Origin: Syncephalis fuscata S228 | Lineage: Eukaryota; Fungi; Zoopagomycota | Direction: 5' to 3' | NCBI GenBank assembly: GCA_025786725.1 | Contig: JAHLTZ010000077.1 | Location: 1-36,208 of the forward strand | Length of the DNA: 36,208 nucleotides | Part shown: piece by piece, positions 2,468-36,208 of the stretch | Numbering within the stretch: position 1 is the stretch's first letter | Layout of the letters: the number at the start of each line of letters is the position of its first letter | Notes under the pieces: generated by a model | Seen by the model: the letters and a program-made list of their open reading frames with translations, nothing else | Told to the model about the DNA's origin: nothing | The model's database searches: none | Translations under genes and position numbers: made by a program

Positions 2468-3708
2468 GAATAAAATATTTGTCTGATGAATGTATTCAAA
2501 TGCAATTAGCAAAGTGTAAAGTTAAGGTAAAATACGCAAAAACATAAAAAAAGCTCTTTGCCAATAAATGAAACACAGGTGGTGAAATTCTCACGATAAC
2601 TTGAAGCTATAGCGACATTTATTTAAAACAATGAGGAGCCAATGCTTTACCAATACTGTATTCTATAATAATTGAGCTTGATATTAAACTACAGCCATTT
2701 TTATCATTACATTGACCATTTCGCTAATGAACGTGTTCTATGATAGTAACTTATTTTGGTGGTAGAATAATTTTATTTATTTATTTTATCTTTTTAATAT
2801 AACCTAATATTTTAAATTATTTATTAATAAAGATTTTAATTCATTTTCAATATTTTTATTCATATATTCCATTGTTGTATTGTGTTGTTACAATATCTAA
2901 TTACGGTATTATGGCCGCGTAGTTATCTACCATGCGATTGATCCATAACATTCATCATGAAGTCGAACAACATGATAACGATAACATGTGAATAGACACG
3001 ACAACAATATACTAAATACTAGGACTAACAATCATAAACAAACAGCTATCCAAGAACATAACTAGTAGATACTTGTTGTTTACTGACACATGATCAACCA
3101 TATGAACAAAGCTCAAGTTTTATTAACAATAGTATTTACTATACACTACTAGCTTTATTAGGACTATAATAAACATATCTATATTTCTAGTTTATATTAT
3201 TTTTTCTACTTTAGTTAAAAGTGTCATTTAGTTATTAAAAGCTTAACTATGGTAATAGATAATTAAAAAAGAATCATTTATTATTTATTTTATAATAGCA
3301 TCAGGCTCATGTTGTACTAAGGCAAGTAATTAATTAGTGGTCACTGATGCTTAGGTGATAGAAGTAGGCTTGGAAAAAATGTAACTATTCAGTTGCTAGT
3401 CGTTGCGATGTAGTGCTAGGTTGTTAACAATCAACAATTATTCTTATATCAATATCAGTACAACATCATTTCATTATATGATAGTGATAGATTTTTTACT
3501 ATCCATGGTATATTTACAAATAAACAGTCGATTTTATTGCCAATATATATAACTACAATATTCACATTAACATTGACATATTTATACCGGCCTATGCTTG
3601 TAGCTAATACAATATAATTGCACATGTTTTTTGTTAATACTATTACTTGATTAATAATTAAGAATTATTGAATACAAATAGAACACAATTATCAATATAG
3701 CAATTTGA

Positions 3709-4269
3709 TTGTTTTTTTTAAAATGGAACCATAAGTTTATTACAAGTTTGCACAGTTAAATAGGAACAACTAATTGCAAGCTTATTAGTAAAAGTGATTT
3801 TATTGACTAATGACTGGATAAACCGGAGCATTGGCCAAAACTTGATATATAAATAGACTGGACGGCGTAGTTGTCAAATGGTCTTGTTTTTCACCGAATA
3901 TATATCTAAAGTGTATTGAAATAGTGGCTTGATTACACTACCAATGCTAATGTCTTGAAACCATCGATTATGATTGACACTTGGGTTTGCATCGAATTTT
4001 GCAAAAAACCATGCATTCATGCATGCATTTTTGACATTCCGCACTATTACCACGACGAACCAAAGCTGGATTACCATCCATCGTAGCTGGTTTAGCATCC
4101 ACCACGGCTGTAGTGGCTATCAAAGCCACAACGACGGTGCAAACGACGGCAATAGAAAGCTTCATGGTGATATTAATTTGTTAAAACAAACAAATAAAAG
4201 AGATAGTAGAGTGTGGTTGGTATAGAGTGTATAGTAGTGCGTGTATAGCAAGAAGTAGAGTGTAATGAT
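3709..4269 (-). repeat. Palindrome 1, left arm (561 bp)
   Basis: Reverse complement of 4803-5363 (constant coordinate sum 9072). Two substitutions seen (3784/5288 and 3861/5211), both 3' of the CDS. Confidence 0.97.
3968..4165 (-). CDS. Small secreted cysteine-rich prepropeptide, copy A (65 aa)
   Basis: MK plus a hydrophobic signal ending VDA, a short propeptide ending LVRR, and a 27-aa tail with 6 Cys. Good Kozak context (CACCATG). Intronless and identical to copy B. Confidence 0.88.
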   Translation of the reverse strand: MKLSIAVVCTVVVALIATTAVVDAKPATMDGNPALVRRGNSAECQKCMHECMVFCKIRCKPKCQS

Positions 4270-4554
4270 CGCAACTGGCTATAATAAAAGTAAAGAATTA
4301 TATAAAAATACCATTTTGATACATTAAATTTGTTTTTACATCAAAGCTGTGTGCTATTCTGTATGCATGCAGATGTTGAGAACCGAATCGGTAGAAATGG
4401 CAACAAAGACATTATTATTATTTTTTACAAAGCCAAAACAATATACTTGTTTTTACCAAATAGTTAAATCATGTAACAGAAAATACAGGCGAATATGTCT
4501 ATTTTTATCGCATATGTACTGGATTATTATCATTGTTACATTATTCGTGCAAAT

Positions 4555-4623
4555 GACCGGGCAGGTTAAAAGAAAGACCAGGCAGGTTAAAAGAAAGACC
4601 AGGCAGGTTAAAATAAAGACTGG
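4555..4623 (+). repeat. 21-bp minisatellite, about 3.3 copies, in the palindrome 1 spacer
   Basis: GACCRGGCAGGTTAAAAKAAA at 4555, 4576 and 4597, plus a partial GACTGG at 4618. Confidence 0.95.
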
Positions 4624-4802
4624 AAGCATTCTATCCCGCCCTGAATCTATTGGTACATGTGCACCTCAAACCATTACCTGGATTGTTTTATTGGTTCATA
4701 TTACACACCAATGGTATATCTTGTATACTACAGTATACTAGCATCTCAGCATAACCATAAGTTTAAATAGCCCACAAAATATACACAACCAACTGCGATA
4801 TC

Positions 4803-5363
4803 ATCATTACACTCTACTTCTTGCTATACACGCACTACTATACACTCTATACCAACCACACTCTACTATCTCTTTTATTTGTTTGTTTTAACAAATTAAT
4901 ATCACCATGAAGCTTTCTATTGCCGTCGTTTGCACCGTCGTTGTGGCTTTGATAGCCACTACAGCCGTGGTGGATGCTAAACCAGCTACGATGGATGGTA
5001 ATCCAGCTTTGGTTCGTCGTGGTAATAGTGCGGAATGTCAAAAATGCATGCATGAATGCATGGTTTTTTGCAAAATTCGATGCAAACCCAAGTGTCAATC
5101 ATAATCGATGGTTTCAAGACATTAGCATTGGTAGTGTAATCAAGCCACTATTTCAATACACTTTAGATATATATTCGGTGAAAAACAAGACCATTTGACA
5201 ACTACGCCGTTCAGTCTATTTATATATCAAGTTTTGGCCAATGCTCCGGTTTATCCAGTCATTAGTCAATAAAATCACTTTTACTAACAAGCTTGCAATT
5301 AGTTGTTCCTATTTAACTGTGCAAACTTGTAATAAACTTATGGTTCCATTTTAAAAAAAACAA
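4803..5363 (+). repeat. Palindrome 1, right arm (561 bp)
   Basis: Inverted copy of 3709-4269. Confidence 0.97.
4907..5104 (+). CDS. Small secreted cysteine-rich prepropeptide, copy B (65 aa)
   Basis: Same protein as 3968-4165. AATAAA at 5268 and 5331 downstream. Confidence 0.88.
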   Translation: MKLSIAVVCTVVVALIATTAVVDAKPATMDGNPALVRRGNSAECQKCMHECMVFCKIRCKPKCQS

Positions 5364-8300
5364 GCCAGTTGTAATTCTTTAAATTATAGAGTGAGCTGTG
5401 ATTGGTACATGCATGCATTTCATTCAACACTATGCCCATTGTTATGGGGGGTAATCATTGTTTCGAATTTACAAATGCATCAAATCTAGGCATATCATGC
5501 TACATGCTGTGCAACTGCCATCATTCAAATGGTGGCTAATCTAAATCACCTGAAATTGATTCTACAATGAGTATTGTTTGTAGGATGATGTATCATGGCA
5601 TTTTAAGCAATGGGACATTCCAACAAGTCATTTTCGCCATCAGTTTTCTGTTGTAAACTGAAATACATCGGCTAAATTACACGCAATACAATATCCAGAC
5701 ACTAGACTAGATACAATAAAAAATTCTGCTCAAACATCAACAATTTTGAGTGCATAATGGCTGTGGATTGCATATAAATTGGTAATTATCCAAGGCCTAA
5801 CTGCTGCTTACATTTATAAAATCACTTCTGACAAGTTAAGCAAAATAGAATGTAGAAGAACAAGCCAAAGCAGAAACCAATGGAAAAACAACTGGCAGCT
5901 CAAAAGCTTACTGGTTTAACTTATAACAAATCATTATCGGCATACCATGTTAAGCTGCGTTTATCAACGATCTAACTACTGATAATACAGCTAGAACAAT
6001 AGCTTTAAACGAAAGTAACGCATGAAATTAAAAACATTGTACATAGCATTTAATAAAACTGCAAAATACACACATGCTGTTGTTACTGTTCTATAATTCC
6101 GCACAGGGTTTTGTGAAAGTGTGACCAAGAGATATGCCATGTGATTGGATCACCAGTTAAAGTCGCATGTGATTGATCACAAGAATAATATATTTATTGG
6201 ATATTAATACCGATTACTAGTAACAAATGTCTATTACAACAATATGACGTGTAGCTACTTGTTAGTTGTGAGCATATGAGCAGTCACCTGAACTAATATG
6301 CTGCACTAATGATGAAATACTACAAGGCATTCCAGTTCTATTATTAGTTGTGTTTACTATACAATGATAGCTTTATTCAATATAAATAAAGTAATAGTCA
6401 AGTTTCTAGTCCAATATTATTTCTACTTAGTGTCATACAAGTTATTCAATTTATTATAGTTAAACTGTGGTAATTAATGACCAATAAGGAATAATTTTAT
6501 TATAAAAGCAATACAACCAAACAACACATTGTATTCTGAGCGTTAATGTAAGCGTTAATAAGCATCAGAAATTAACGTTATAGGATAGCAACAGGACAAG
6601 GTGTTGCTTGGTCATCTAAGTTGTGATTCCTAAAACTAGAAGCGTAACAACATAATTAGTAAATAGTCATCTGATACACAACACAATTTATGAGCTATTA
6701 TAATCATTATTTATAATACTGTTAATAAATAGAGAAATTTTGAAAAATGTCTTGTTTTTAAAATTCAAAAATTTTAAATTCACTCCTCTTAATAAATTAT
6801 GATTTTAAATAAGCATAAATAAAATTATTAAATTATTAAACCCTTTTATTAAAAGAATATCGCTAAATATTTACCAAACTATTTAAAAAATTATATTTAC
6901 CAGCATCGAAGAAATGAGGATCGCTATTGACGAGTTTAAGCTCGCTAGCGATTGCAATTTTAAGAGGAAAAACAATCTAGCAAGATTATTGCTTATTTAT
7001 TTTGATAAAGACAATTCCAGCAAGAAATTTCAGTTTGTTTGGCTGCCAAAAAGCGGAAACTGGCCTAATAAAAATTGTCCAATGCAATCTTAACCATTTT
7101 AATGGTTGTCCATATAATTTTAGAAATAATATCATTAAATGTATTAATAAATATATTACAAATAATGTTGCTACATTTTTAAATATAAAACCAAAAGATG
7201 TACAAGTAAAATTATTAAGTACATATTTAATTATTAAATACACACTAACAATTGTAATAGCTTAACAGATGTTATTATTTTCATTATAAAACTTAATCTG
7301 CTTTTAATTCAATAAAAAATGACATTGTTACAACAACAGTAATAAAATTATGTAAATTTGACTAAACAATTAAAGAAAGAAAAAATAAAAGTAGCTTACT
7401 CAAATGTTTTAATACCAATTTAACAATAATAAAATATTATTAGTGTCAAACGGCTTTAACTTCTAACAATAGCTTAGATTAGCAGATTATAACAAAAGTT
7501 GTAATTGCATAAATTCCAACAATAAGCTAAAATGAATTGGGTTATAAAAAGGCACCTTATTATTTGAGTAACAATATTAGTTATTTATTATATTGCTGAA
7601 ACATAAACAAAAGTTATAAAGCTAAAAATCACTGATGGGAAAAAAGTTAATCGCAATTAATGCAACAATTTTAATTTAAGACCTTTTATTTACGTAATTT
7701 AGTTAATTGTAGCCATATTAACAGTAATGCCAATTGTGTTCTACTTGTTAAAGGGCTTCCAGCGATATACTTGTGGTAAATGCAACTCAAAAACACAGTA
7801 AAAAACATACTGTGTAAATATTAGCACTAATAGTGTTGAAGCAGTAGTTAATGTTGGAATAAAAGTTTACAACTATTTTTAGTCAATATAGTTAGACCAA
7901 AATAAGCTGAATATTAGTCAATTAACATTTATATGTTAAACATTAAAGCATAGAGAACACCAGAGGCTAACATGATAGCACAGCATCAAGATAGAGTGCT
8001 GTTTGCTCGTTTAATCCACGGCTTCTAAAACTAAAGCTATAGCACTAATGGCATTGCATTAATACTTTTAACATTTGAATCAAACAGCCATGTATATATA
8101 TGTCACTATTATTAATAGCTATTTGTGATGCTTATTGCAAATGATAGTTCGTTGCTGGTTCGCATTTAATTTATGCACCAAAAGCAATAAATCAAATACA
8201 GCTTTGTTAAGTTTATAATGTTTTTAAACTTTACCTAGATTAATTGCTTATAACATGCTAAAATCATTAAGCATACAAACAAACAATACACGCCAATATT

Positions 8301-8528
8301 GCCAACATCAACGGCAAACTCTTTTAAAACATATTAAATAGCCTGCTTGTATCGATACTAGCAGTGGCAATTTGTTAGATACAAACTGCTTAATCCGATC
8401 TAGCACTTGTAGGCAAATCAGTAAATCAAAGACAATAAATTGTAATAAGTTTTATTAATTAGCACTTTAGCGCTGATTCGGTTCTAGCGTTGTTCGTTAT
8501 TCTATCTTAGTCGTACGTCGCTGCTTGT

Positions 8529-9014
8529 TTAGCATTTTGGGAAGTTCTTTGGCAGTTTATCGTTACGGCCAAAGTCCTGTGTCCAGTAAGCTTTGCCTCC
8601 ACTGCCTACAGCCATGCCACTGCCGAAATGCGTGGCATCGCTTACTAAGTTTTGGAGATGAAGAGGTGAGCGAATCCAGCTGTCCATAACTTGCTCAATA
8701 GATGTCTGTCCGCCCGCAACATTTTCTCTTACGCTGTTCCATCCGCCACCGCTGATAGAGCAGCGTTCCATTAAAGCAGGTTCACCAGCGAAAGAATGAC
8801 TCATTTGGTTATTACGAGCTTGAAGTGCACTATGGGTCTGTGCAGCTTTGTTTAAACCGGCATCAATTGCAAGTGGTGGAAGCTTTCGTTCACCGCGGAA
8901 TTTGTTGACCAGACAAAGCATCTTTGTCGGATCGAAGCTAACTGGACCGGCAGTCACTTCAATTGTGCTAGCGGCAAATACGGTAATTGCGACGAGAGTG
9001 ATGAGAAATTTCAT
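8529..9014 (-). CDS. Secreted CAP/SCP (PR-1 superfamily) protein of bacterial YkwD-like type, copy A
   Basis: Signal peptide, then LVNKFR..LPPL, AAQTHS, MSH, ENVAGGQ, V.DSW..SPLH..N, G.G and YWTQDFG motifs. Intronless. Confidence 0.95.
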   Translation of the reverse strand: MKFLITLVAITVFAASTIEVTAGPVSFDPTKMLCLVNKFRGERKLPPLAIDAGLNKAAQTHSALQARNNQMSHSFAGEPALMERCSISGGGWNSVRENVAGGQTSIEQVMDSWIRSPLHLQNLVSDATHFGSGMAVGSGGKAYWTQDFGRNDKLPKNFPKC

Positions 9015-9719
9015 GATGATAGTGGTTGTAGGTTCAAAAGTCGTGCGTAGCAGTTGGTGCGTTTAGTCGATCTATCAGACTAGCTGTATAAATGATGTAA
9101 AAAGTGCTGGTTTATAGGTCGTTATAGAAGCTGTAGCTTTGTTGGGATGTTGAATCAATTATTGACCAAATAAACCGACGTGTATTTATATTCAATTTTG
9201 TATCTACTGCTTTAAGATATGTTTTATAATAATACCCATGAACAAAATCATTTTCATTGTTTAGGTCCTAAGTGGTGTAAAAGACAAACATACTTAGTTG
9301 CACCATGCTGAAACATGATTGTTCTTAGTGGCCCAGACTTTAAAGTTACAAGTAATAAGCCGGCTATTTCATTGTCATCAAACAGTATCTTTGTACATTG
9401 TATTGTTATAATTTGCCCGCCATGCTTGTATGTTATAGGCTTATTAACTATTTAGTAATATTAATATTTTGATACAACGTGCAATAGTTATGAACATTGT
9501 AAAGTGGCATGATCTGCTATTGTTATAGATATAGCCATCATAAAAATATGATATTTGTTATTCCAATAGCTATAGCTATTCTAGAATTTAATTATGTTTT
9601 ATTTGTAATAATCATGGCCGGCTTAAAAAGTATTTTTAACGTAATTATGTGGTAAAAATTAATGGAATGTGAATTAAAAAATAATAGCGATCAGCTAATT
9701 GGTATAGCGTTGTTAAAAT

Positions 9720-10695
9720 TATGTATAACTTTTCGTAAAATGAAGCAAATTGTTTGATGTTTTGCACAAGTATACATATGGCATATAAGTGACTATTAGC
9801 AAAGTATACCGTTATTATAGTGCATGATGGTGTAATGGTTGCAATAATACGCTGATAAATGTGCAAAAATAGCAGGTTTTAGTCATTTATGACTTGTATA
9901 AACAAAACACAGCAAAATGATTGCTAGATTCGAGTTCTCCATGCTTCGCTGATTAGATTGGTATAAGATTTAGAATAATGATTTTTGAAAAAATAATTAG
10001 TCAAAAAATGCGATTTACGTATTTTTAATCCACTCAATAAATATTGATAATAATACGTATAACTTTACTTAAAATAAAGCAAATGGCATAATATTTTGCA
10101 CAAGTATGTATATGATATACAGATAGCTACTGGCAAAGTATACCGTTATTGTATTGCGTGATGGTGTATTTATCATGGCAATACACTAATAAATGTGTAA
10201 AAATAGTGGTTTTTGGTCATTTATGACTTGTATAAACAAAATACAACAAAATGATTGCTAGATTCGAGTTTTTATGCTTTGCTGATCAGATTGGTATAAG
10301 CTTTAGAACAGCGATTTTTGAAAAAATAATTAGTCAAAAAATGCGATTTACGTATTTTTAATCCACTCAATAAATATTGATAATAATACGTATAACTTTA
10401 CTTAGAATAAAGCAAATGGCATAATATTTTGCACAAGTATGTATATGATATACAGATAGCTACTGGCAAAGTATACCGTTATTGTATTGCGTGATGGTGT
10501 ATTTATCATGGCAATACACTAATAAATGTGTAAAAATAGTGGTTTTTGGTCATTCATGGCTTATATAACTAAAATACAACAAAATGATTGCTAGATTCGA
10601 GTTCTCCATGCTAAGCTGTACCGTTTGGTATAAAATATAGAACAGCGATTTTGGCAACAAAAGTTAGCCGAAATTCAATTTGCGCGTATTTAGTT
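9720..10695. repeat. 333-334-bp tandem repeat array, left (~2.9 units, diverged at both ends)
   Basis: Marker ATGATTGCTAGATTCGAG recurs at 9917, 10251 and 10584. A diverged part-unit lies at ~9720-9916. Confidence 0.93.
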
Positions 10696-10875
10696 GTTAA
10701 CAAAACCTTAGTTATATGTATATTTGTGGCATAAATTGCCGCCATGTATCGGTATTTCTGCATAGCAACTTTATTATATTTGTTTAGCGCTATATAACAC
10801 TTTGAATTTACTATGGACCAAACTTTATTTTTGCATTAAAATTCTAAATTTTTTAAAATTAAATTACTTTTCATT

Positions 10876-12184
10876 AACTAAATACGTGCAAATTGAATTT
10901 TGGCTAACTTTTGTTGCAAAAATTGCTGTTCTATATTTTATATCAATCTGATCAGCAAAGCATGGAAAACTCGAATCTAGCAATTATTTTGCTGTATTTT
11001 AGTTATATAAGCCATGAATGACCAAAAACCACTATTTTTACACATTTATTAGTGTATTGCCATGATAAATACACCATCACGCAATACAATAACGGTATAC
11101 TTTGCCAGTAGCTATCTGTATATCATATACATACTTGTGCAAAATATTATGCCATTTGCTTTATTCTAAGTAAAGTTATACGTATTATTATCAATATTTA
11201 TTGAGTGGATTAAAAATACGTAAATCGCATTTTTTGACTAATTATTTTTTCAAAAATCGCTGTTCTAAAGCTTATACCAATCTGATCAGCAAAGCATAAA
11301 AACTCGAATCTAGCAATCATTTTGTTGTATTTTGTTTATACAAGTCATAAATGACCAAAAACCACTATTTTTACACATTTATTAGTGTATTGCCATGATA
11401 AATACACCATCACGCAATACAATAACGGTATACTTTGCCAGTAGCTATCTGTATATCATATACATACTTGTGCAAAATATTATGCCATTTGCTTTATTTT
11501 AAGTAAAGTTATACGTATTATTATCAATATTTATTGAGTGGATTAAAAATACGTAAATCGCATTTTTTGACTAATTATTTTTTCAAAAATCGCTGTTCTA
11601 AAGCTTATACCAATCTGATCAGCAAAGCATAAAAACTCGAATCTAGCAATCATTTTGTTGTATTTTGTTTATACAAGTCATAAATGACCAAAAACCACTA
11701 TTTTTACACATTTATTAGTGTATTGCCATGATAAATACACCATCACGCAATACAATAACGGTATACTTTGCCAGTAGCTATCTGTATATCATATACATAC
11801 TTGTGCAAAATATTATGCCATTTGCTTTATTTTAAGTAAAGTTATACGTATTATTATCAATATTTATTGAGTGGATTAAAAATACGTAAATCGCATTTTT
11901 TGACTAATTATTTTTTCAAAAATCATTATTCTAAATCTTATACCAATCTAATCAGCGAAGCATGGAGAACTCGAATCTAGCAATCATTTTGCTGTGTTTT
12001 GTTTATACAAGTCATAAATGACTAAAACCTGCTATTTTTGCACATTTATCAGCGTATTATTGCAACCATTACACCATCATGCACTATAATAACGGTATAC
12101 TTTGCTAATAGTCACTTATATGCCATATGTATACTTGTGCAAAACATCAAACAATTTGCTTCATTTTACGAAAAGTTATACATA
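10876..12184. repeat. 333-334-bp tandem repeat array, right (~3.9 units, inverted relative to the left array)
   Basis: Reverse marker TAGCAATYAT at 10978, 11311, 11644 and 11978. Confidence 0.93.
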
Positions 12185-12787
12185 ATTTTAACAACGCTAT
12201 ACCAATTAGCTGATCGCTATTATTTTTTAATTCACATTCCATTAATTTTTACCACATAATTACGTTAAAAATACTTTTTAAGCCGGCCATGATTATTACA
12301 AATAAAACATAATTAAATTCTAGAATAGCTATAGCTATTGGAATAACAAATATCATATTTTTATGATGGCTATATCTATAACAATAGCAGATCATGCCAC
12401 TTTACAATGTTCATAACTATTGCACGTTGTATCAAAATATTAATATTACTAAATAGTTAATAAGCCTATAACATACAAGCATGGCGGGCAAATTATAACA
12501 ATACAATGTACAAAGATACTGTTTGATGACAATGAAATAGCCGGCTTATTACTTGTAACTTTAAAGTCTGGGCCACTAAGAACAATCATGTTTCAGCATG
12601 GTGCAACTAAGTATGTTTGTCTTTTACACCACTTAGGACCTAAACAATGAAAATGATTTTGTTCATGGGTATTATTATAAAACATATCTTAAAGCAGTAG
12701 ATACAAAATTGAATATAAATACACGTCGGTTTATTTGGTCAATAATTGATTCAACATCCCAACAAAGCTACAGCTTCTATAACGACC

Positions 12788-12793
12788 TATAAA
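12788..12793 (+). promoter_or_regulatory. Candidate TATA box of CAP copy B (mirror at 9111-9116 for copy A)
   Basis: TATAAA about 100 bp upstream of the ATG at 12890. Confidence 0.5.
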
Positions 12794-12889
12794 CCAGCAC
12801 TTTTTACATCATTTATACAGCTAGTCTGATAGATCGACTAAACGCACCAACTGCTACGCACGACTTTTGAACCTACAACCACTATCATC

Positions 12890-13375
12890 ATGAAATTTCT
12901 CATCACTCTCGTCGCAATTACCGTATTTGCCGCTAGCACAATTGAAGTGACTGCCGGTCCAGTTAGCTTCGATCCGACAAAGATGCTTTGTCTGGTCAAC
13001 AAATTCCGCGGTGAACGAAAGCTTCCACCACTTGCAATTGATGCCGGTTTAAACAAAGCTGCACAGACCCATAGTGCACTTCAAGCTCGTAATAACCAAA
13101 TGAGTCATTCTTTCGCTGGTGAACCTGCTTTAATGGAACGCTGCTCTATCAGCGGTGGCGGATGGAACAGCGTAAGAGAAAATGTTGCGGGCGGACAGAC
13201 ATCTATTGAGCAAGTTATGGACAGCTGGATTCGCTCACCTCTTCATCTCCAAAACTTAGTAAGCGATGCCACGCATTTCGGCAGTGGCATGGCTGTAGGC
13301 AGTGGAGGCAAAGCTTACTGGACACAGGACTTTGGCCGTAACGATAAACTGCCAAAGAACTTCCCAAAATGCTAA
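12890..13375 (+). CDS. Secreted CAP/SCP protein, copy B
   Basis: 161-aa protein identical to 8529-9014. AATAAA at 13448. Confidence 0.95.
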   Translation: MKFLITLVAITVFAASTIEVTAGPVSFDPTKMLCLVNKFRGERKLPPLAIDAGLNKAAQTHSALQARNNQMSHSFAGEPALMERCSISGGGWNSVRENVAGGQTSIEQVMDSWIRSPLHLQNLVSDATHFGSGMAVGSGGKAYWTQDFGRNDKLPKNFPKC

Positions 13376-16300
13376 ACAAGCAGCGACGTACGACTAAGAT
13401 AGAATAACGAACAACGCTAGAACCGAATCAGCGCTAAAGTGCTAATTAATAAAACTTATTACAATTTATTGTCTTTGATTTACTGATTTGCCTACAAGTG
13501 CTAGATCGGATTAAGCAGTTTGTATCTAACAAATTGCCACTGCTAGTATCGATACAAGCAGGCTATTTAATATGTTTTAAAAGAGTTTGCCGTTGATGTT
13601 GGCAATATTGGCGTGTATTGTTTGTTTGTATGCTTAATGATTTTAGCATGTTATAAGCAATTAATCTAGGTAAAGTTTAAAAACATTATAAACTTAACAA
13701 AGCTGTATTTGATTTATTGCTTTTGGTGCATAAATTAAATGCGAACCAGCAACGAACTATCATTTGCAATAAGCATCACAAATAGCTATTAATAATAGTG
13801 ACATATATATACATGGCTGTTTGATTCAAATGTTAAAAGTATTAATGCAATGCCATTAGTGCTATAGCTTTAGTTTTAGAAGCCGTGGATTAAACGAGCA
13901 AACAGCACTCTATCTTGATGCTGTGCTATCATGTTAGCCTCTGGTGTTCTCTATGCTTTAATGTTTAACATATAAATGTTAATTGACTAATATTCAGCTT
14001 ATTTTGGTCTAACTATATTGACTAAAAATAGTTGTAAACTTTTATTCCAACATTAACTACTGCTTCAACACTATTAGTGCTAATATTTACACAGTATGTT
14101 TTTTACTGTGTTTTTGAGTTGCATTTACCACAAGTATATCGCTGGAAGCCCTTTAACAAGTAGAACACAATTGGCATTACTGTTAATATGGCTACAATTA
14201 ACTAAATTACGTAAATAAAAGGTCTTAAATTAAAATTGTTGCATTAATTGCGATTAACTTTTTTCCCATCAGTGATTTTTAGCTTTATAACTTTTGTTTA
14301 TGTTTCAGCAATATAATAAATAACTAATATTGTTACTCAAATATTTGAATGTATATATGCCGAACAATCTTTAAAAAATAACTTTTAGCACTATATTTAA
14401 ATCACGACGATATTATTATTGCTAATGCTTACACCTCATCATTAACAACTATATTTCCTAGTATGTCTATATTTTTATTAAAGCTATTTATCATAACTTT
14501 ATAACATAATGATGTGGGGCAGGCCAATAATTAGCTAATACTGGCCATCATTCTAAATAAAATCTATTATTATAAATGTTGGTTTGTGGTACAACGAATA
14601 CAATTATCGTATATTACTTATTATAGTGGAGCTATAGAAAGCTTTTATAGCTATTTGAACAAAAAAGAAGGCATAAAGGTATTGGCAATAGGCTTGTTGG
14701 TAATTATAGCATTTTACGATTATTTATTTGTTTTATTGTTTTTTTAACCTTATTACATAATATTAAAAATTTTATTGGTTATTTATTATTATTTAGTGGT
14801 CAAATGAAAATTTTAATAAAATTTGCGCAATTCAACAAGACATTTGTTTTATTAAACATCATGATGGGCGGTGAATGATATCAATCATCAAATACGCATC
14901 ATTATATATTTATTATCCAGTATGCATATATACTTTATTCACTTATATCATTAAATCATTGTATTCGCACATTACTGCGTTATTGCAATTGGCGCTACTT
15001 TTATTCCTGGCCTATTCCATTTTGAACTTTTTATTTTTATATATCCCCATCATTTGATTTTAATATCACAAAATTCATAACTAATTGGAATTAATTATTT
15101 TAATCATAATTAGTTCTTAACAAGTGGGCTAATAAATACTTTAATAAAGTAATAAATCTGCATATACTTGTATTATTTGTTCTATCAATATAGCTAAATA
15201 AGCAAAACGAATCAAAGTTTATTTTTTAAAAAGTTAGAATCAAGCAAACAACAATCCTGGATAGCTCGTAAATCATATATAATGTAATATATAAATATAT
15301 AGTGCATATGACCTAATGAATGTGTGGCAAAAAATTAGTTGCATTTTATTAATAATAAAGTTAGAGCAAAAACAGTTTTGGATAGAGGAAGGCTAGATGA
15401 GTATAAAATGATATATAAAATGATAAATGTACGGTAAGAAAGCATATAAAATAATGTTAAAGTTATAGTGCATATAGTGCAATGAGTGAGATGCATTGAA
15501 ACATATAAACAATAAATGTGCCTAGTATATCATTAAATGCTGTATAGTAGTGTGGGATATAATGGAAATGATATAAGTGAATTTAGTATATATGTGTACT
15601 GAATAATGAATCTATGGTGATAAGTATTTTGATTACTAACGTTACTCACCACCCACCATCATGCTCAATAGAAAAAAAGTAGTATTAAATTTGACTAATT
15701 ACAATATGTTGGTATTCACAATAAATCCCTCTTGTTTAATTAATAGAAAAATAACGTATAGCTGCAATAAGTAAGAATGTGTCAATATCTTGGCCCAATT
15801 TTCTTGCCAAATTATCAAAATTCATTATATTTTGGTTACATAGTTGCCATTTTATATCTAAAAAAATATAAAAATATTATCCAACCATGCCATACATACT
15901 CCATATACGAGCATGGAAAAGCTAAATAAAAACTTTGCTATTTAGTGATTATTTGCGATTAAAATCTAATGATATTGAAATGGCATATTGCAAATTGGCA
16001 AAATATTTAAACCCAAATAAATGTTTACAAAACACTAAATTATAAATTTAAATATAAAGTATGTAAAAGTATCAATAAATGATTTAGTATAATTAAGTAG
16101 TAAAATACATTGCTATATGAATTAAAAAACAATAGTAAAATCTAATTAATAAAATGCTAATAGTGCTATATATCACTTTGCGTAAAATACAGCAATTGTG
16201 GAGCCACATTAAGTACTTTCTTTTACTACATTATGAATTAATAAATGTGTGTCATTTTGTTTAATTATTAATATTGTTAATAATAATAATATTGTTATTA

Positions 16301-29112: not shown

Positions 29113-32100
29113 ATGGCTACAACTGGACCTGTACTGGCGGCAACCAACGCCCTCTTGCGAGACCATAGCCATAACAGTAACAATAGCACCAACAGTAGCA
29201 GTAACAACAACAACAACAGCAGCAGCAGCAATAACCATAACACTAACAACAATAGCAATCAACAGCGCGAATGTAATAGCACAGCAACGTCTCCCGTTAT
29301 AAAAAGTATACCTGCTCGACGTTCTATAGCCATCAATGTAGCAGCAGCTAACATTTCCTCGTCTTCGTACTCTCTACCTTCGTTTGATCGATCTAGTCGC
29401 GAAAGTGACGACGACGACAACGACGACAATGATGATAGAGATCATACTTGGGCAACTGCACCAAATACACCACTAGTGCTTGAAGAAGATACATTAAAAC
29501 AATTACAAATGATGCTATCGAGCGATTCACCAACTAGTAGCTACGTTGGTAACGATGCAGCTGTCCCTTTGAATAGTAGCAATAGCAGTGATAATGGTGC
29601 CATGCCACACCATCGTTCACGCCGTGCCTACAGCGTTACTGACGACAATCAACATACCCTTTCAGCTGTAGAACTATGTGAAGAGTGTGCTGATCCATTC
29701 TCTGGTGTACCTCAGCCGTGTCTACGTCGTCCTCTTACTTCACCATTACCCGTACCAACAACAACAAACACGGCCAATATTAACATCCCGGCCACTACAC
29801 CTGTTCATATTGCGGTATTATCTGCTAAAGGTGCAGCTAAAATGGCGCCTATGCTCCAACATGTACCACAACGCGTTCAATCACTACCCACTGCCATTCA
29901 CATGGATAGTGCCTTACTTGGACGTACCCATGCTGCCACTTTAGCCGCCGCCGTATCATCCAATCAACATTCAGCGGAGTTACCAACATCTCCACGCCTA
30001 CGTCGGAGTAGCAGTCTTGATCAAGTGGATAAATTACAATTGGACCAATTACATCGTTGGATTATCGGGTTTTGTGTGGTTACATTTGATTTAGAATTAG
30101 GACATGGTAAATGACAAAGTGTTACAGTCATTCACTAATGATTAATTACCATTCATCATTTAGCTATGGAATTGGTTTATCCCCCCTTTGAATTGGATCC
30201 ATATCTTAAACAGAATATGTAAGTAGATAAATAGGAATAGTAACCACTTTGGTTAATCTGTATATATATACTTGTAGTTCTTTTTGTTCATTTCCCGACT
30301 CACACGCCGTTTCTCTAGGCGATACAGTGTATAGCTTTCGTGTACGGGTTGGCTTGGCTCAATCTACAGCATCAACAGCCGCACTAGGTCTTCTACACTA
30401 ACACGATCTCAATCATCGGGACCAGTCAAGCCTAAACTTGCTTTGCCTGGTATGTATGGATATAAATGTGCTTTTACATAGATATCTAATAAATCCAAGT
30501 AGATATTTCTGATCATGATGGATTTCTATATGGTTATGTACTATTTAGACAACGAAAAGATGCTCGACTTCGACGTGGCTATTTTCAGGTAATTACTTTA
30601 ACAATCATGCTAATCATAATTATAGCAAGTATTAACTTCAATTGTTACTCCTTTTATAATTGTAATAGAAATCACTTGTATTGTTGAGTAAACAACAGCT
30701 TCCAGGTTTATTTCTCGACATGGTACGTCGTGTTGGTGCAGCCTATTTCAATGAAGGACGTCAAATATTGGAACAAACATGTCAATCCATTGCTAGCTGG
30801 TAATTATTAACACTACCGTATAACTATATAATGACTAATATAATATAATAGGCCAAAACCATCTTTAGGCAAAACATTGATACTACCTTTGCTTAATACA
30901 AAATTACAAGTTGAATTGCCAGCACGTCATCGTGTTCAACTACTACCGCGAAGTGCTGCTCTTAATAATCCTGAACAATATGTAAGTAATTAATTGAATA
31001 ATCTATTTATTACAACTATTCATACTCATACTCATATGTATATTACATTTATCTGTTTAGTTATTGGCATCTATACCACCGGCTGCTTTATATACACATA
31101 CACGTGAATTTCTAAATGATCTATGGCTATGCTGGGAACTTGTTTTACTGGGAGAACCCATCATGGTATTGGCCAAAGGAACACGTGAATGTGCCGATTC
31201 AGTACTTGCACTTATTAATTTAATTGCACCAGTAAGTGATTAACGATCTAATTAACTATATAATAGGTTACTTAATAGATTATCTAGATCCCTTATGGTG
31301 GTGATTGGCGACCTTATTTCACGGTCCATGACTCAGATTTCAAGGCATACTCATCACGATTAAAGGTAAGTTTAGTCATAAATAATAATAATGACTTTAA
31401 TACTAACAATGTTAATAGACACCAGGCAGTGTTATTGTTGGTGTTACAAATCCATTCTTCAAGGATGCATTTGATCATTGGCCAAATATTCTACGTGTTA
31501 ATCAAGCTGATATGCCGTAAGTAATATTGTGATACCCTTATCATAGATCAATAGATTCTAATAGAATTAATATAAATGCTTATAATAATAGTTTATCAAC
31601 TAGTGCACCAACACGAACACCAAGTCCATTTGAACGACCATCATTAAAAAAGTTTGGCCGTCAAGGCTCTGGCTCATCATTTGACTTTATACCTGTAAGT
31701 TATTCATTTAAGCATTCTAATATTTTATTAAATCGATTAATAGGGTCTTACGAGCAAGCGTAAACGAGTCATCGACAAGGATACGGCACTTATTAAGGAG
31801 ATTACAACATTGACGCAACAACGTGTTAGTCGTAAGTCTATTGCTATTATAATAATAGCATTTTATTAATAATGAATAATTATTTATATTTAATAGCTCA
31901 TCTACTTAATGATACAATCCGTCGATACTTTGCCGATCTAACCGAACGTTTTCTCGAACCACTTGATCGATACTTTACAACGTTAATTCCCGCTCATAGG
32001 TATGTAATTACCCACTTATTATAATAATTGTACTTGTAATAATAATAACAATACTAGTGAATTAACTACATCTCACGCACCACCTACATTGAAATCATTC

Positions 32101-32633
32101 GTCAAGATGAATTTCTTAAATTTGTACAAGAAAAAGGTATTTATTATTATTATTATTATTACATTTAATGATATTTATTTAACTAAATACTCGTTTTATA
32201 TAGGTACTCGATTAAAATTTAAAACTGCTGCCTTTCAAGCAACAGCCTGTACCGATTTCTATGCCCAATTTCTACGCTGTCCCAACTTTGTACAATGGCT
32301 ACAAATGCGATCAGTGGCCGCTGAACGACGACTACGACAAACTCATTTACGCTTATTAACCGATGCCAATCTATCAGATTGGATGCAGCATCGCACCGAA
32401 GTTGAACTAGTCGACATGTTAATGCGTGTACGATTCCATTTAGTAAGTTTTTTAATGTATAAACTATAATATAATACTAATCACCATTTAATCAATAATA
32501 GAGATCGGATGTATCATCTAATGAGCAACGTCCTACCCAGGAACAAATAGAACAATTACGCTCACAGGCCGATTTAATTGTTGGTCGATTACCAGCCGAT
32601 CTTAAAACAATGCTTGTACCATCCTCACCTTAA
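29113..32633 (+). CDS. DENND6: DENN-domain protein DENND6-like (Rab GEF) with a long low-complexity N-terminus and an apparent 1-bp frameshift near 30389
   Basis: Multi-exon gene. Motifs [87 protein letters not shown]. The start codon is uncertain. Confidence 0.9.
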
Positions 32634-32928
32634 AGGAAAAGAATAGTAACAACAATGACAGTATATATATATATATATTATATATATTATACGGTCCATT
32701 TAATGCTGTACTGCTATTTAATCATCTACGCGGTCATTTTAGCAACTACGCTACATTGCCCCTCCTATCCTTATCATCTTTATTATAATTATATTTCTGC
32801 TATGCATGTACACTAGACAATGCGTCTAACCAACGACGACCATCATCATTACCATCATCATTACCATCATCATTGTCGCATTAAGCAATAAAGTGAACGA
32901 TAGTTTTATTAATAGCAATGTCAACACT

Positions 32929-36208
<3,280 letters not shown>

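What the first reader, a model, noticed from the sequence alone, without database searches (positions are those of the whole stretch)
3709..14343. Island of twin palindromes, each holding an identical head-to-head pair of secreted effector-like genes
Seen: two unrelated spaced palindromes lie 2.2 kb apart in a ~14-kb AT-rich island between dense, intron-rich housekeeping genes. Each duplicates exactly one intronless signal-peptide gene in divergent orientation. No transposase, reverse transcriptase or recombinase is visible. Inference: the same architecture twice in a row suggests a recurring mechanism rather than an accident. One possibility is palindrome-based dosage doubling with arm-to-arm gene conversion (analogous to mammalian Y-chromosome palindromes) applied to host-interaction genes. 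I know of no described fungal effector compartment of this form, but I cannot search the literature.
Basis: partly seen in the sequence, partly recalled or inferred. Interest (0 to 1): 0.85.

Follow-up and report, generated by a model that had tools for sequence, protein, structure and literature searches.

The report
Gene-bearing palindromes in a mould parasite
Two real mirror-image DNA duplications in the fungus-parasitising fungus Syncephalis fuscata each hold two copies of a secreted-protein gene. The copies are kept alike by copying between the arms, as in Y-chromosome palindromes, but the two palindromes arose in different ways and one has a promoter that lies flipped between the two chromosome copies.

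Summary
Palindrome A has arms 3709-4269 and 4803-5363 (2 mismatches) with a 533-bp spacer. Palindrome B has arms 7561-10603 and 11301-14343 (3043 bp, 100% identical). Each holds a divergent pair of identical signal-peptide genes: a 65-aa Cys-rich peptide in A and a 161-aa CAP/PR-1 protein in B.

The genome is Syncephalis fuscata. The window is a haplotig of contig C146, which carries both palindromes with the same boundaries, so they are not fold-back artefacts.

- **Arm-to-arm gene conversion is shown.** In B, 45 sites differ between the haplotypes but are shared by both arms, against 1 arm difference. A duplicated paralogous CAP palindrome on C2 gives 16 against 0.
- **Recombination between arms is shown.** The spacer of A is inverted between the haplotypes.
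- **The two palindromes have different origins.** In A, the right arm is a transcript-length copy inserted at the far end of the gene's own conserved promoter module. It is flanked by an 8-bp duplication that is single in paralogues, which looks like retroposition. B is centred on a dispersed foldback element made of head-to-head 333-bp arrays.
- **Only one copy in A faces the canonical promoter**, so simple dosage doubling does not hold there.
- **Secretome enrichment could not be tested.** Earlier notes of this scan report many other palindromes in this genome on other DNA, including non-secreted ones.

The parts
2883..3708 (.). Block D: the family-conserved region downstream of the peptide gene unit. 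It is contiguous with the left arm in paralogues.
   Evidence: At least 40 copies at about 80% identity end at 3708. Paralogue alignments run unbroken from 2900 across 3709 to 4269.
3709..4269 (-). Palindrome A, left arm. This is the parental transcription unit of the 65-aa secreted Cys-rich peptide gene (CDS 3968-4165, mirrored AATAAA at 3736-3741).
   Evidence: Continuity with D in paralogues. Very high word depth in the probable RNA run X4 over the arm, and none in the spacer or flanks.
4270..4802 (+). Palindrome A spacer. This is the single copy of the roughly 515-bp upstream (promoter) module conserved across the peptide gene family. In this haplotype it faces the right arm; in C146 it is inverted. 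It contains a 21-bp minisatellite at 4555-4620, and the reverse-complemented 8-bp duplicate lies at 4272-4279.
   Evidence: At least 60 copies, always about 105 bp upstream of a family gene in one orientation. Flipped between haplotypes: 94.9% identity when flipped, 49.6% in the same orientation. Minisatellite.
4803..5363 (+). Palindrome A, right arm. This is the inserted, transcript-length inverted copy of the gene (CDS 4907-5104; AATAAA at 5331-5336; it ends in A8-CAA).
   Evidence: Paralogues lack it and join the module directly to block X. Two mismatches to the left arm.
5364..5371 (+). The 8-bp direct duplication GCCAGTTG that flanks the inserted arm. Its partner lies at the far end of the module.
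   Evidence: Single copy at the module/X junction in six paralogous loci (L019, L021, L023, L024 and, more diverged, L017 and L022). Duplicated in both the window and C146.
5364..6081 (.). Block X: the family-conserved region that abuts the upstream end of the promoter module in paralogues.
   Evidence: copies at 82-84% identity covering 1-718 of the query.
6080..6658 (.). Young high-copy repeat of about 575 bp (at least 35 copies at 86-95% identity), probably a non-autonomous mobile element.
7561..10603 (-). Palindrome B, left arm. It holds the CAP gene (CDS 8529-9014), its flanks, and the left 333-bp array (9723-10652).
10696..10875 (.). Unique 180-bp core of the foldback element at the symmetry centre of palindrome B.
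   Evidence: pair I2. The core is conserved at other foldback loci at 88-98% identity. It has the same orientation in C146, but is flipped between C4/C113 and between C90/C348.
10898..12181 (+). Right 333-bp array (3.9 units), one unit longer than the left array.
   Evidence: The unit occurs at 127 or more places genome-wide, nearly always as (-)array/(+)array pairs.
11301..14343 (+). Palindrome B, right arm, with the CAP gene (CDS 12890-13375).
   Evidence: Four-way comparison with C146.
2742..2747 (.). Empty site of a 5.4-kb Ty3/gypsy-type LTR retrotransposon that is present only in the allelic contig C146.
   Evidence: Gap in the window/C146 alignment. Gag and pol ORFs. PR-RT-RNaseH-INT domains. 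Two identical 215-bp LTRs.

Best explanation
These are two genuine, independently formed inverted duplications in a repeat-rich secreted-protein gene island of Syncephalis fuscata. Intrachromosomal recombination between their arms keeps them alike.

**Shown**
- Both palindromes pre-date the split of the two assembled haplotypes (same boundaries in each).
- The arms evolve in concert by arm-to-arm gene conversion.
- A crossover between the arms of A has inverted its spacer in one haplotype.
- Foldback cores elsewhere also flip between haplotigs.

**Inferred origin of A**
- The left arm is the original gene.
- A copy of exactly its transcribed region was inserted in inverse orientation at the far end of its own roughly 515-bp promoter module, with two extra bases at the 5' junction.
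- The insertion made an 8-bp target duplication, most likely by reverse transcription of the very abundant mRNA.
- As a result one canonical promoter sits between two copies. It faces the parent copy in C146 and the inserted copy in the window.

**Inferred origin of B**
- This CAP subfamily carries a dispersed foldback element upstream of the gene: head-to-head 333-bp arrays around a 180-bp core.
- Template exchange or break-induced copying across those inverted arrays duplicated the CAP flank onto the other side.
- Whole palindromes were later copied as units (C2).

**Consequence**
- There are two identical CAP genes, each with its own upstream region. There are two peptide gene copies, of which probably only one is strongly driven at a time.
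For: **Reality of the palindromes**
- The window aligns end to end with C146 at 97-99% identity, and both palindromes are there with identical outer boundaries.
- The assembly keeps arm differences where they exist: 13 substitutions and 2 indels in A on C146, 98.9% on C2, 98.4% on C350. The 100% identity in B is therefore not a generic polishing effect.
- Contigs of public runs reproduce the C146-type CAP arm base for base.

**Conversion**
- B: 41 substitutions and 4 indels of pattern aabb against 1 arm-specific site in 2445 columns, and no abab sites.
- C2a/C2b: 16 aabb, 0 abab, 9 singletons.

**Crossover**
- The spacer of A is 94.9% identical when flipped and 49.6% in the same orientation.
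- Foldback cores are flipped between C4 and C113 and between C90b and C348.

**Origin of A**
- Paralogues have D, the transcription unit, the module and X contiguous, with one copy of the 8-mer. The window and C146 have the 561-bp unit inserted between two copies of it.
- The insert starts within about 10 nt of where X4 contigs end, and it ends 25 nt after an AATAAA.
- Reverse-transcriptase machinery is present. There are at least 75 RVT_1 matches, many in intact ORFs. Long ORFs pair RT with a weak endonuclease-domain match. A polymorphic LTR element with identical LTRs lies 1 kb away on C146.

**Origin of B**
- The 333-bp unit and the core form a dispersed family, arranged head to head at 25 or more loci.
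- The element sits 0.7-1.6 kb upstream of every sampled member of this CAP subfamily with at least 68% identity, including single-copy loci.
- C2b is a 7.2-kb segmental copy of C2a that clips 129 bp of one arm.
Against: - No long read spanning either palindrome was available. The laid runs are short contigs only.
- The inserted arm of A has no poly(A) tail beyond the genomic A8-CAA.
- The 8-mer resembles the parent's downstream flank at 5 of 8 positions. That would also fit a DNA-level template switch guided by microhomology.
- No intron difference can be used, because the parent gene is intronless.
- The transcript ends are known only to contig and 200-nt-bin resolution, and X4 is only guessed to be RNA.
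- For B, no empty site or outgroup shows which arm is original. Palindromic CAP loci are not each other's closest relatives (dS window-C2 0.78, C2-C147 0.35), so either several origins or several losses are needed.
- GC-biased conversion was not detected (20 AT>GC against 15 GC>AT).
Confidence: 0.7

Rival explanations
1. Assembly or polishing artefact. Under this reading the palindromes are fold-back chimeric reads, or the arms were made identical by consensus polishing.
For: The arms of B are 100% identical. No spanning long read could be examined, because the runs laid were short contigs. The window is a small 36-kb contig.
Against: Both palindromes occur, with the same boundaries but 1-3% sequence difference, on the independently assembled 449-kb contig C146. 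They are internal and have spacers. Related palindromes exist on C2 and C350. Arm differences are retained elsewhere in the same assembly. Public-run contigs match the C146 arm exactly.
Confidence: 0.04
2. Palindrome A arose at the DNA level, not through RNA. A replication template switch (a microhomology-mediated, FoSTeS/MMBIR-like templated insertion) copied the gene in reverse and returned 8 bp back on the original template.
For: There is no poly(A) tail at the insert's 3' end. The 8-mer matches the parent's downstream flank at 5 of 8 positions. The copy lies only 0.5 kb from its source and is inverted, as is typical of template switching. This genome is rich in inverted rearrangements.
Against: It does not explain why the copied segment begins within about 10 nt of the apparent transcript start and ends 25 nt after AATAAA. 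There is no microhomology at the 5' junction, where two unmatched bases are present. Intact RT-encoding elements are present and recently active.
Confidence: 0.3
3. One reading: a dedicated, recurring palindrome mechanism that doubles the dosage of host-interaction (secreted) genes, forming a special effector compartment.
For: At least four distinct secreted-gene palindromes exist (A, the B type on C347/C146 and on C2, and C350). Both genes appear expressed, the peptide gene at very high word depth. In B each copy has its own complete upstream region.
Against: A and B have different origins. In A only one copy faces the conserved promoter. Only about 2 of roughly 75 loci of the peptide family, and one CAP subfamily, are palindromic. 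Unchecked earlier notes report many palindromes around kinases, receptors, non-coding RNAs and gene-free DNA in the same genome.
Confidence: 0.12
4. Palindrome B is a composite foldback transposon that carries the CAP gene in its long inverted termini and moves as a unit.
For: The centre belongs to a dispersed foldback family with recent copies at 94-97% identity on other contigs. The whole C2 palindrome was copied 56 kb away. C4/C113 hold the complete foldback centre plus one CAP arm at a different locus.
Against: The C2b copy clips one arm by 129 bp and adds 726 bp of flank, so it looks like an ordinary segmental duplication and not an end-defined transposition. No target duplication or terminal motif was seen at the arm ends. 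Most foldback copies are not next to CAP genes. No transposase was identified.
Confidence: 0.12

Closest known systems
Ampliconic palindromes of mammalian sex chromosomes (Rozen et al. 2003, as cited in PMC5490193), and the palindromes of the asexual rotifer Adineta vaga and the springtail Folsomia candida (PMC5490193)
   Same: Long inverted arms sit around a short spacer and carry intact genes. Arm-to-arm identity far exceeds the divergence between homologous copies, which is concerted evolution by gene conversion. A spacer inversion polymorphism is present.
   Different: The arms are 0.56 and 3 kb, not tens to hundreds of kb or Mb. They lie on ordinary gene-rich DNA of a zygomycete fungus, not on a non-recombining chromosome. 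The cargo is secreted-protein genes. No GC bias of conversion was detected. One palindrome has an insertion-type origin.
Long inverted repeats of Candida albicans that drive inversions, LOH and CNV (Todd et al. 2019, PMC6591007)
   Same: This is a diploid fungus in which inverted repeats containing ORFs recombine. It has a heterozygous inversion of the sequence between the repeats, the 3.1-kb CEN4 core. That is the same kind of event as the flipped spacer of A and the flipped foldback cores here.
   Different: That work does not describe concerted evolution of gene pairs, secreted-gene palindromes, or a promoter as the inverted segment.
Processed retrocopies made by retrotransposon machinery (reviewed in PMC5470649)
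   Same: The copy is limited to the transcribed region, is flanked by a short target-site duplication, and derives from a very highly expressed gene. RT-encoding elements are present.
   Different: There is no poly(A) tail. The copy inserted 0.5 kb upstream of its own parent in inverse orientation, creating a palindrome, and afterwards exchanged sequence with the parent. Intron loss cannot be scored.
Foldback (FB-type) elements, whose long inverted termini are built of tandem subrepeats (my own knowledge of Drosophila FB elements), and replication template exchange at nearby inverted repeats in yeasts (my own knowledge)
   Same: The centre of B consists of head-to-head arrays of a 333-bp unit around a short core. 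The family is dispersed in many copies, and the core flips.
   Different: No transposase, terminal motif or target duplication was established. The element is stably linked upstream of one CAP gene subfamily.

Membership tests
Gene-conversion-maintained palindrome (Y-chromosome type) | Long inverted arms with a short unique spacer, carrying intact genes | tested here: met
Gene-conversion-maintained palindrome (Y-chromosome type) | Arm-to-arm divergence far below the divergence between homologous palindromes (concerted evolution) | tested here: met
   B: 45 aabb sites against 1 arm-specific site. C2a/C2b: 16 aabb, 0 abab. A: 2 arm differences in the window against 13 substitutions and 2 indels in C146, so homogenisation there is uneven.
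Gene-conversion-maintained palindrome (Y-chromosome type) | Recombination between arms that can invert the spacer | tested here: met
   The spacer of A is flipped between haplotypes. Foldback cores are flipped between C4/C113 and between C90b/C348. The core of B is not flipped between the window and C146.
Gene-conversion-maintained palindrome (Y-chromosome type) | GC-biased direction of conversion | tested here: inconclusive
   Polarised with C4/C113 as outgroup: 20 AT>GC against 15 GC>AT in 35% GC sequence.
Processed retrocopy | The copy coincides with the mature transcript (start site to cleavage site) | tested here: inconclusive
   Probable-RNA contigs reach to within about 10 nt of the inner arm end. 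The arm ends 25 nt after AATAAA. Resolution is only to contigs and 200-nt bins, and X4 is only guessed to be RNA.
Processed retrocopy | Target-site duplication, with an empty site in relatives | tested here: met
   The 8-bp GCCAGTTG lies on both sides of the insert and is single at the same junction in six paralogues.
Processed retrocopy | Poly(A) tail at the 3' end of the copy | tested here: not met
   The arm ends in A8-CAA, which the parent also has. No extra A run precedes the duplication.
Processed retrocopy | Loss of the parent's introns | not testable with these tools
   The parent and its close paralogues are intronless over this unit.
Processed retrocopy | Reverse-transcriptase machinery in the genome | tested here: met
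   At least 75 RVT_1 matches. Long ORFs of 1672-2168 aa pair RT with a weak endonuclease-domain match. An intact polymorphic Ty3/gypsy element is present.
Foldback (FB-like) element | Inverted termini made of tandem subrepeats around a central core; dispersed and multicopy | tested here: met
Foldback (FB-like) element | Evidence of transposition (target duplications, empty sites, transposase) | not tested
Only CAP-linked copies were in hand.
CAP / PR-1 superfamily (PF00188) | CAP domain above Pfam's gathering score, with an N-terminal signal-like segment | tested here: met
   63.9 bits against a cut-off of 21.1, residues 35-148. The signal peptide was judged by eye only.
Programmed invertible-promoter switch (Hin/Fim type; 2-micron FLP type) | A promoter between inverted repeats, found in both orientations | tested here: met
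   However, the two orientations were seen only as one per haplotig.
Programmed invertible-promoter switch (Hin/Fim type; 2-micron FLP type) | A dedicated site-specific recombinase, and switching within a clone that changes expression | not testable with these tools
   No recombinase ORF lies in the window. No raw reads were available.

The most novel reading that the evidence does not exclude
Palindrome A works as a eukaryotic flip-flop expression switch. A single strong promoter module is inverted by homologous recombination between two mirror copies of a secreted-peptide gene, so it drives one copy or the other. Where the copies have diverged, as on C146 (one arm S41R, the other V12F and V53I), flipping would change which peptide variant is secreted. 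Gene conversion would periodically reset the pair. The same logic could apply to other palindromes with invertible centres in this genome.
Probability: 0.08. Interest if true: 0.85.

Novelty: new variant of a known kind. Interest (0 to 1): 0.55.

Why it matters
This gives base-level evidence that small gene-bearing palindromes in an early-diverging fungus behave like sex-chromosome palindromes: they show concerted evolution and spacer inversion. Two routes to such palindromes are visible here side by side. One is a transcript-length insertion next to its own promoter. The other is a duplication seeded by a foldback element.

For students of fungal secreted-protein or effector evolution, it shows a way in which identical gene pairs are made and kept identical, and in which a promoter can be handed from a parent gene to its copy. 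It also marks Syncephalis fuscata as a genome in which recombination between inverted repeats is unusually easy to study, because the two haplotypes are assembled separately. I found no paper describing this in Syncephalis or in other fungal effector loci.

Tried and rejected
- **Reads.** The only runs found are short Logan contigs from small libraries. They did show very high word depth of a probable RNA run over the arms of A, modest depth over CAP, and an exact match to the C146 CAP allele.
- **Other foldback loci.** For the same reason I could not test whether they also have extended gene-bearing arms.
- **GC-biased conversion.** No signal.
- **Target duplications or microhomology at the outer ends of B and of the C2 palindromes.** None seen.
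- **Rfam on the whole window.** No match.
- **Exact-protein look-up of the CAP protein.** Not on record.
- **Homologue search for CAP.** It found only S. fuscata paralogues and one metagenome fragment. No sister-species locus was available for synteny, and the 'bacterial-type CAP' idea was not pursued.
- **Terminal inverted repeats on the inserted arm of A.** None by eye on the end sequences, so a cut-and-paste DNA transposon was rejected.
- **First self-BLAST of C2.** A coordinate filter of mine hid the symmetric hit. This was corrected.
- **Literature.** Searches found no description of such palindromes in Syncephalis or at fungal effector loci.

Full report
**1. What is there**

The repeat scan finds two inverted repeats in the stated interval.
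- Palindrome A: arms 3701-4269 / 4803-5371, 533 nt apart.
- Palindrome B: arms 7561-10603 / 11301-14343, 3043 nt, 100% complementary.

Self-BLAST refines A to 3709-4269 / 4803-5363 (561 bp, 2 mismatches). It extends B to 7561-10673 / 11232-14343 at 99.2%.

Each arm holds one uninterrupted ORF, in divergent orientation.
- A holds a 65-aa protein at 3968-4165(-) and 4907-5104(+). It has a hydrophobic N-terminus, a dibasic site and a 27-aa tail with six cysteines.
- B holds a 161-aa protein at 8529-9014(-) and 12890-13375(+). It matches the Pfam CAP domain PF00188 at E 3e-17.

The centre of B is not a plain spacer. Head-to-head arrays of a 333-bp unit (2.8 units on the left, 3.9 on the right) surround a 180-bp unique core at 10696-10875.

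The island is AT-rich, with GC 0.24-0.40. It lies between panB and a KA1-type kinase, with a mitochondrial-carrier exon, ELMO and Rpb2 further out.

**2. Organism and assembly context**

The window is a whole 36,208-bp contig (C347) of a 29.4-Mb, 371-contig assembly. Paralogues of the CAP protein lie on contigs whose lengths equal those of C2, C90, C35 and C257. NCBI names those paralogues as Syncephalis fuscata proteins, so the genome is S. fuscata, a zoopagalean parasite of other moulds. Earlier notes of this scan had suggested that name.

The window aligns along its length with C146:116001-146000 at 97-99% identity. It is therefore an alternative haplotype, or a very recent large duplicate, of that region. 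C146 carries both palindromes with the same outer boundaries.

**3. Are they artefacts?**

Several points argue against fold-back chimeras:
- There are two independently assembled copies that differ by 1-3%.
- They sit at internal positions and have spacers.
- Related palindromes exist on C2 and C350.

The same assembly preserves arm differences where they exist: 13 substitutions and 2 indels in A on C146, 98.9% on C2, 98.4% on C350. The perfect identity of B's arms is thus not a general polishing effect.

Contigs of public runs of the same species reproduce the C146-type CAP arm at every diagnostic site. Those runs are only short contigs, so they cannot supply spanning reads or copy depth.

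**4. Concerted evolution**

I aligned the four arms of B, two from the window and two from C146, over 2445 columns outside the arrays.
- 41 substitutions and 4 indels separate the haplotypes but are shared by both arms of each haplotype.
- Only 1 site differs between arms.
- No site shows an arm-specific state shared across haplotypes.

Because the boundaries are identical, the palindrome pre-dates the haplotype split. Each shared difference therefore needs a mutation followed by copying to the other arm.

An independent case gives the same answer. On C2, a 6.6-kb CAP palindrome (84% protein identity to the window's) was copied 56 kb away as a 7.2-kb segment. The four arms show 16 substitutions fixed per palindrome, none arm-specific and shared, and 9 singletons.

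In A the picture is uneven. The window arms differ at 2 sites, and the C146 arms at 13 substitutions and 2 indels. Three sites (two substitutions and one indel) are fixed per haplotype.

Polarising B's differences with the C4/C113 paralogue gave no clear GC bias.

**5. Crossing-over between arms**

The 533-bp spacer of A aligns to the C146 spacer at 94.9% only when reverse-complemented, and at 49.6% otherwise. The spacer is therefore inverted between the haplotypes.

The 180-bp cores of the foldback element are likewise inverted between C4 and C113 and between C90b and C348. The core of B is in the same orientation in both haplotypes. The number of 333-bp units also differs between the window and C146.

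**6. What the pieces of A are**

The peptide's signal region matches 150 or more places in the genome.

The spacer of A is not unique DNA. At least 60 copies at 73-85% identity lie about 105 bp upstream of family genes, always in one orientation. It is the family's conserved upstream (promoter) module.
- In the window it faces the right-hand gene.
- In C146 it faces the left-hand gene.
- In either haplotype only one copy has the canonical upstream region.

The flanks are family modules too:
- Block D (2883-3708) lies downstream of the gene in paralogues.
- Block X (5364-6081) abuts the far end of the module in paralogues.

The paralogous order is D, transcription unit, module, X. This matches the C146 orientation, except that the right arm is absent.

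At the module/X junction the paralogues have one copy of an 8-mer (GCCAGTTG or close variants). The window and C146 have it twice, on either side of the 561-bp right arm, plus two extra bases at the inner junction.

The conclusions from this are:
- The left arm is the parent.
- The right arm is an insertion with an 8-bp target duplication.
- The C146 orientation is ancestral, and the window's spacer has since flipped.

**7. How the insert of A was made (inferred)**

The insert begins within about 10 nt of where contigs of run X4 end. X4 is probably RNA: its word depth is 10^4-10^5 over both arms and about 0 in the spacer and flanks. The insert ends 25 nt after an AATAAA, at a CA following an A8 run. 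A segment bounded by the transcript's ends and flanked by a target duplication is what reverse transcription of the mRNA would give.

The machinery exists in this genome:
- There are at least 75 RT matches, many in intact ORFs.
- ORFs of 1672-2168 aa pair RT with a weak endonuclease-domain match.
- A 5.4-kb Ty3/gypsy element with identical LTRs is present only in C146, about 1 kb left of A.

Three points count against the RNA route:
- There is no poly(A) tail.
- The 8-mer resembles the parent's downstream flank at 5 of 8 positions. That would also suit a DNA template switch, or priming by partial complementarity.
- No intron test is possible.

I put the RNA route at about one half and the DNA template switch at about one third.

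**8. What the centre of B is**

The 333-bp unit has 127 or more matches, a lower bound. At about 25 loci it is arranged as a minus-strand array followed by a plus-strand array. The core is conserved at several of these loci at 88-98% identity. This is a dispersed foldback-type element with recent copies.

Every sampled member of this CAP subfamily with at least 68% identity has the element, or a pair of its units in inverted orientation, 0.7-1.6 kb upstream. That includes the single-copy loci C4/C113, C35, C257 and C348.

C90 has 5.6-kb inverted arms (99.5% identical) 24 kb apart, each with a CAP gene and a foldback element.

Synonymous divergence places the C2 palindrome nearer to the loci on C147 and C90 than to the window (dS 0.35 and 0.52 against 0.78). 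The palindromic state was therefore gained or lost more than once.

The simplest reading, which is inferred, is that template exchange or break-induced copying across the inverted arrays duplicates the CAP flank onto the other side. I found no junction signature at the arm ends.

**9. Function**

Both genes encode probable secreted proteins of a parasite of other fungi.
- The CAP gene is represented in the probable RNA run at modest word depth, by a contig of the C146 allele.
- The peptide gene is represented at very high word depth.
- In B each copy has the same long upstream region, so two active copies are plausible.
- In A this is doubtful, for the reason given in section 6.
- On C146 the two copies of A encode slightly different peptides: one arm has S41R, the other V12F and V53I.

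**10. Comparison with what is known, and novelty**

The behaviour matches gene-conversion-maintained palindromes of sex chromosomes and of asexual animals (PMC5490193 and the work it cites). It also matches the inversions between long inverted repeats in Candida albicans (PMC6591007).

I found nothing on palindromes in Syncephalis, on effector-type gene pairs in such palindromes, or on a palindrome born from a transcript-length copy beside its own promoter.

Earlier, mostly unchecked notes of this scan report many other palindromes on other DNA of this genome. They include kinase and receptor palindromes with conversion and with invertible centres. The phenomenon therefore seems genome-wide and not tied to the secretome.

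I class this as a new variant of a known kind.

**11. Limits**

- The signal peptides were judged by eye only.
- The enrichment test, spanning reads, exact transcript ends and sister-species synteny remain to be done.

Noticed in passing
L025:2336-7756 (C146:118336-123756); empty site at window 2742-2747: An intact 5.4-kb Ty3/gypsy-type LTR retrotransposon is present in the C146 haplotype only. It has a 450-aa gag, a 1178-aa pol with PR-RT-RNaseH-INT domains, and two 100% identical 215-bp LTRs, so it is a very recent, polymorphic insertion.
   Followed up: yes
window 2883-3708, 4270-4802, 5364-6081: The secreted-peptide gene family is copied as a unit of about 2.6 kb (X, promoter module, transcription unit, D). 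The non-coding parts are about 80% identical among 40-60 or more copies. The peptides themselves are only 59-70% identical among the six closest paralogous loci. Parts of the module (positions 20-320 and 81-320) are tandemly repeated at some loci.
   Followed up: partly
window 6080-6658: A repeat of about 575 bp has at least 35 copies at 86-95% identity. It is probably a young non-autonomous mobile element. No terminal inverted repeats were found in a quick scan.
   Followed up: partly
L042:3633-6480 (C350:118133-120980): A third secreted-peptide palindrome: 2.86 kb, 98.4% self-complementary through its centre. It holds a divergent pair of identical 72-aa ORFs whose mature peptide differs from the one in A.
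   Followed up: partly
L034:1-5581 and L035:2731-8324 (C90:1-5581 / 29731-35324): Inverted arms of 5.6 kb (99.5% identical) lie 24 kb apart, each with a CAP gene and a foldback element. The left arm is cut by the contig start.
   Followed up: partly
This could mean either window-specific changes or ectopic conversion between the two loci.
   Followed up: no
C2:578451-580283: Four consecutive CAP-domain matches lie in one 756-aa open frame, which may be a multi-CAP-domain protein. There are about 68 CAP matches genome-wide.
   Followed up: no
C24:317413-319539, C35:507681-509876, C177, C57, C223, C324: Long open frames of 1672-2168 aa pair an RT domain with a weak endonuclease-phosphatase-type match. 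They are candidate intact non-LTR (LINE-like) elements.
   Followed up: partly
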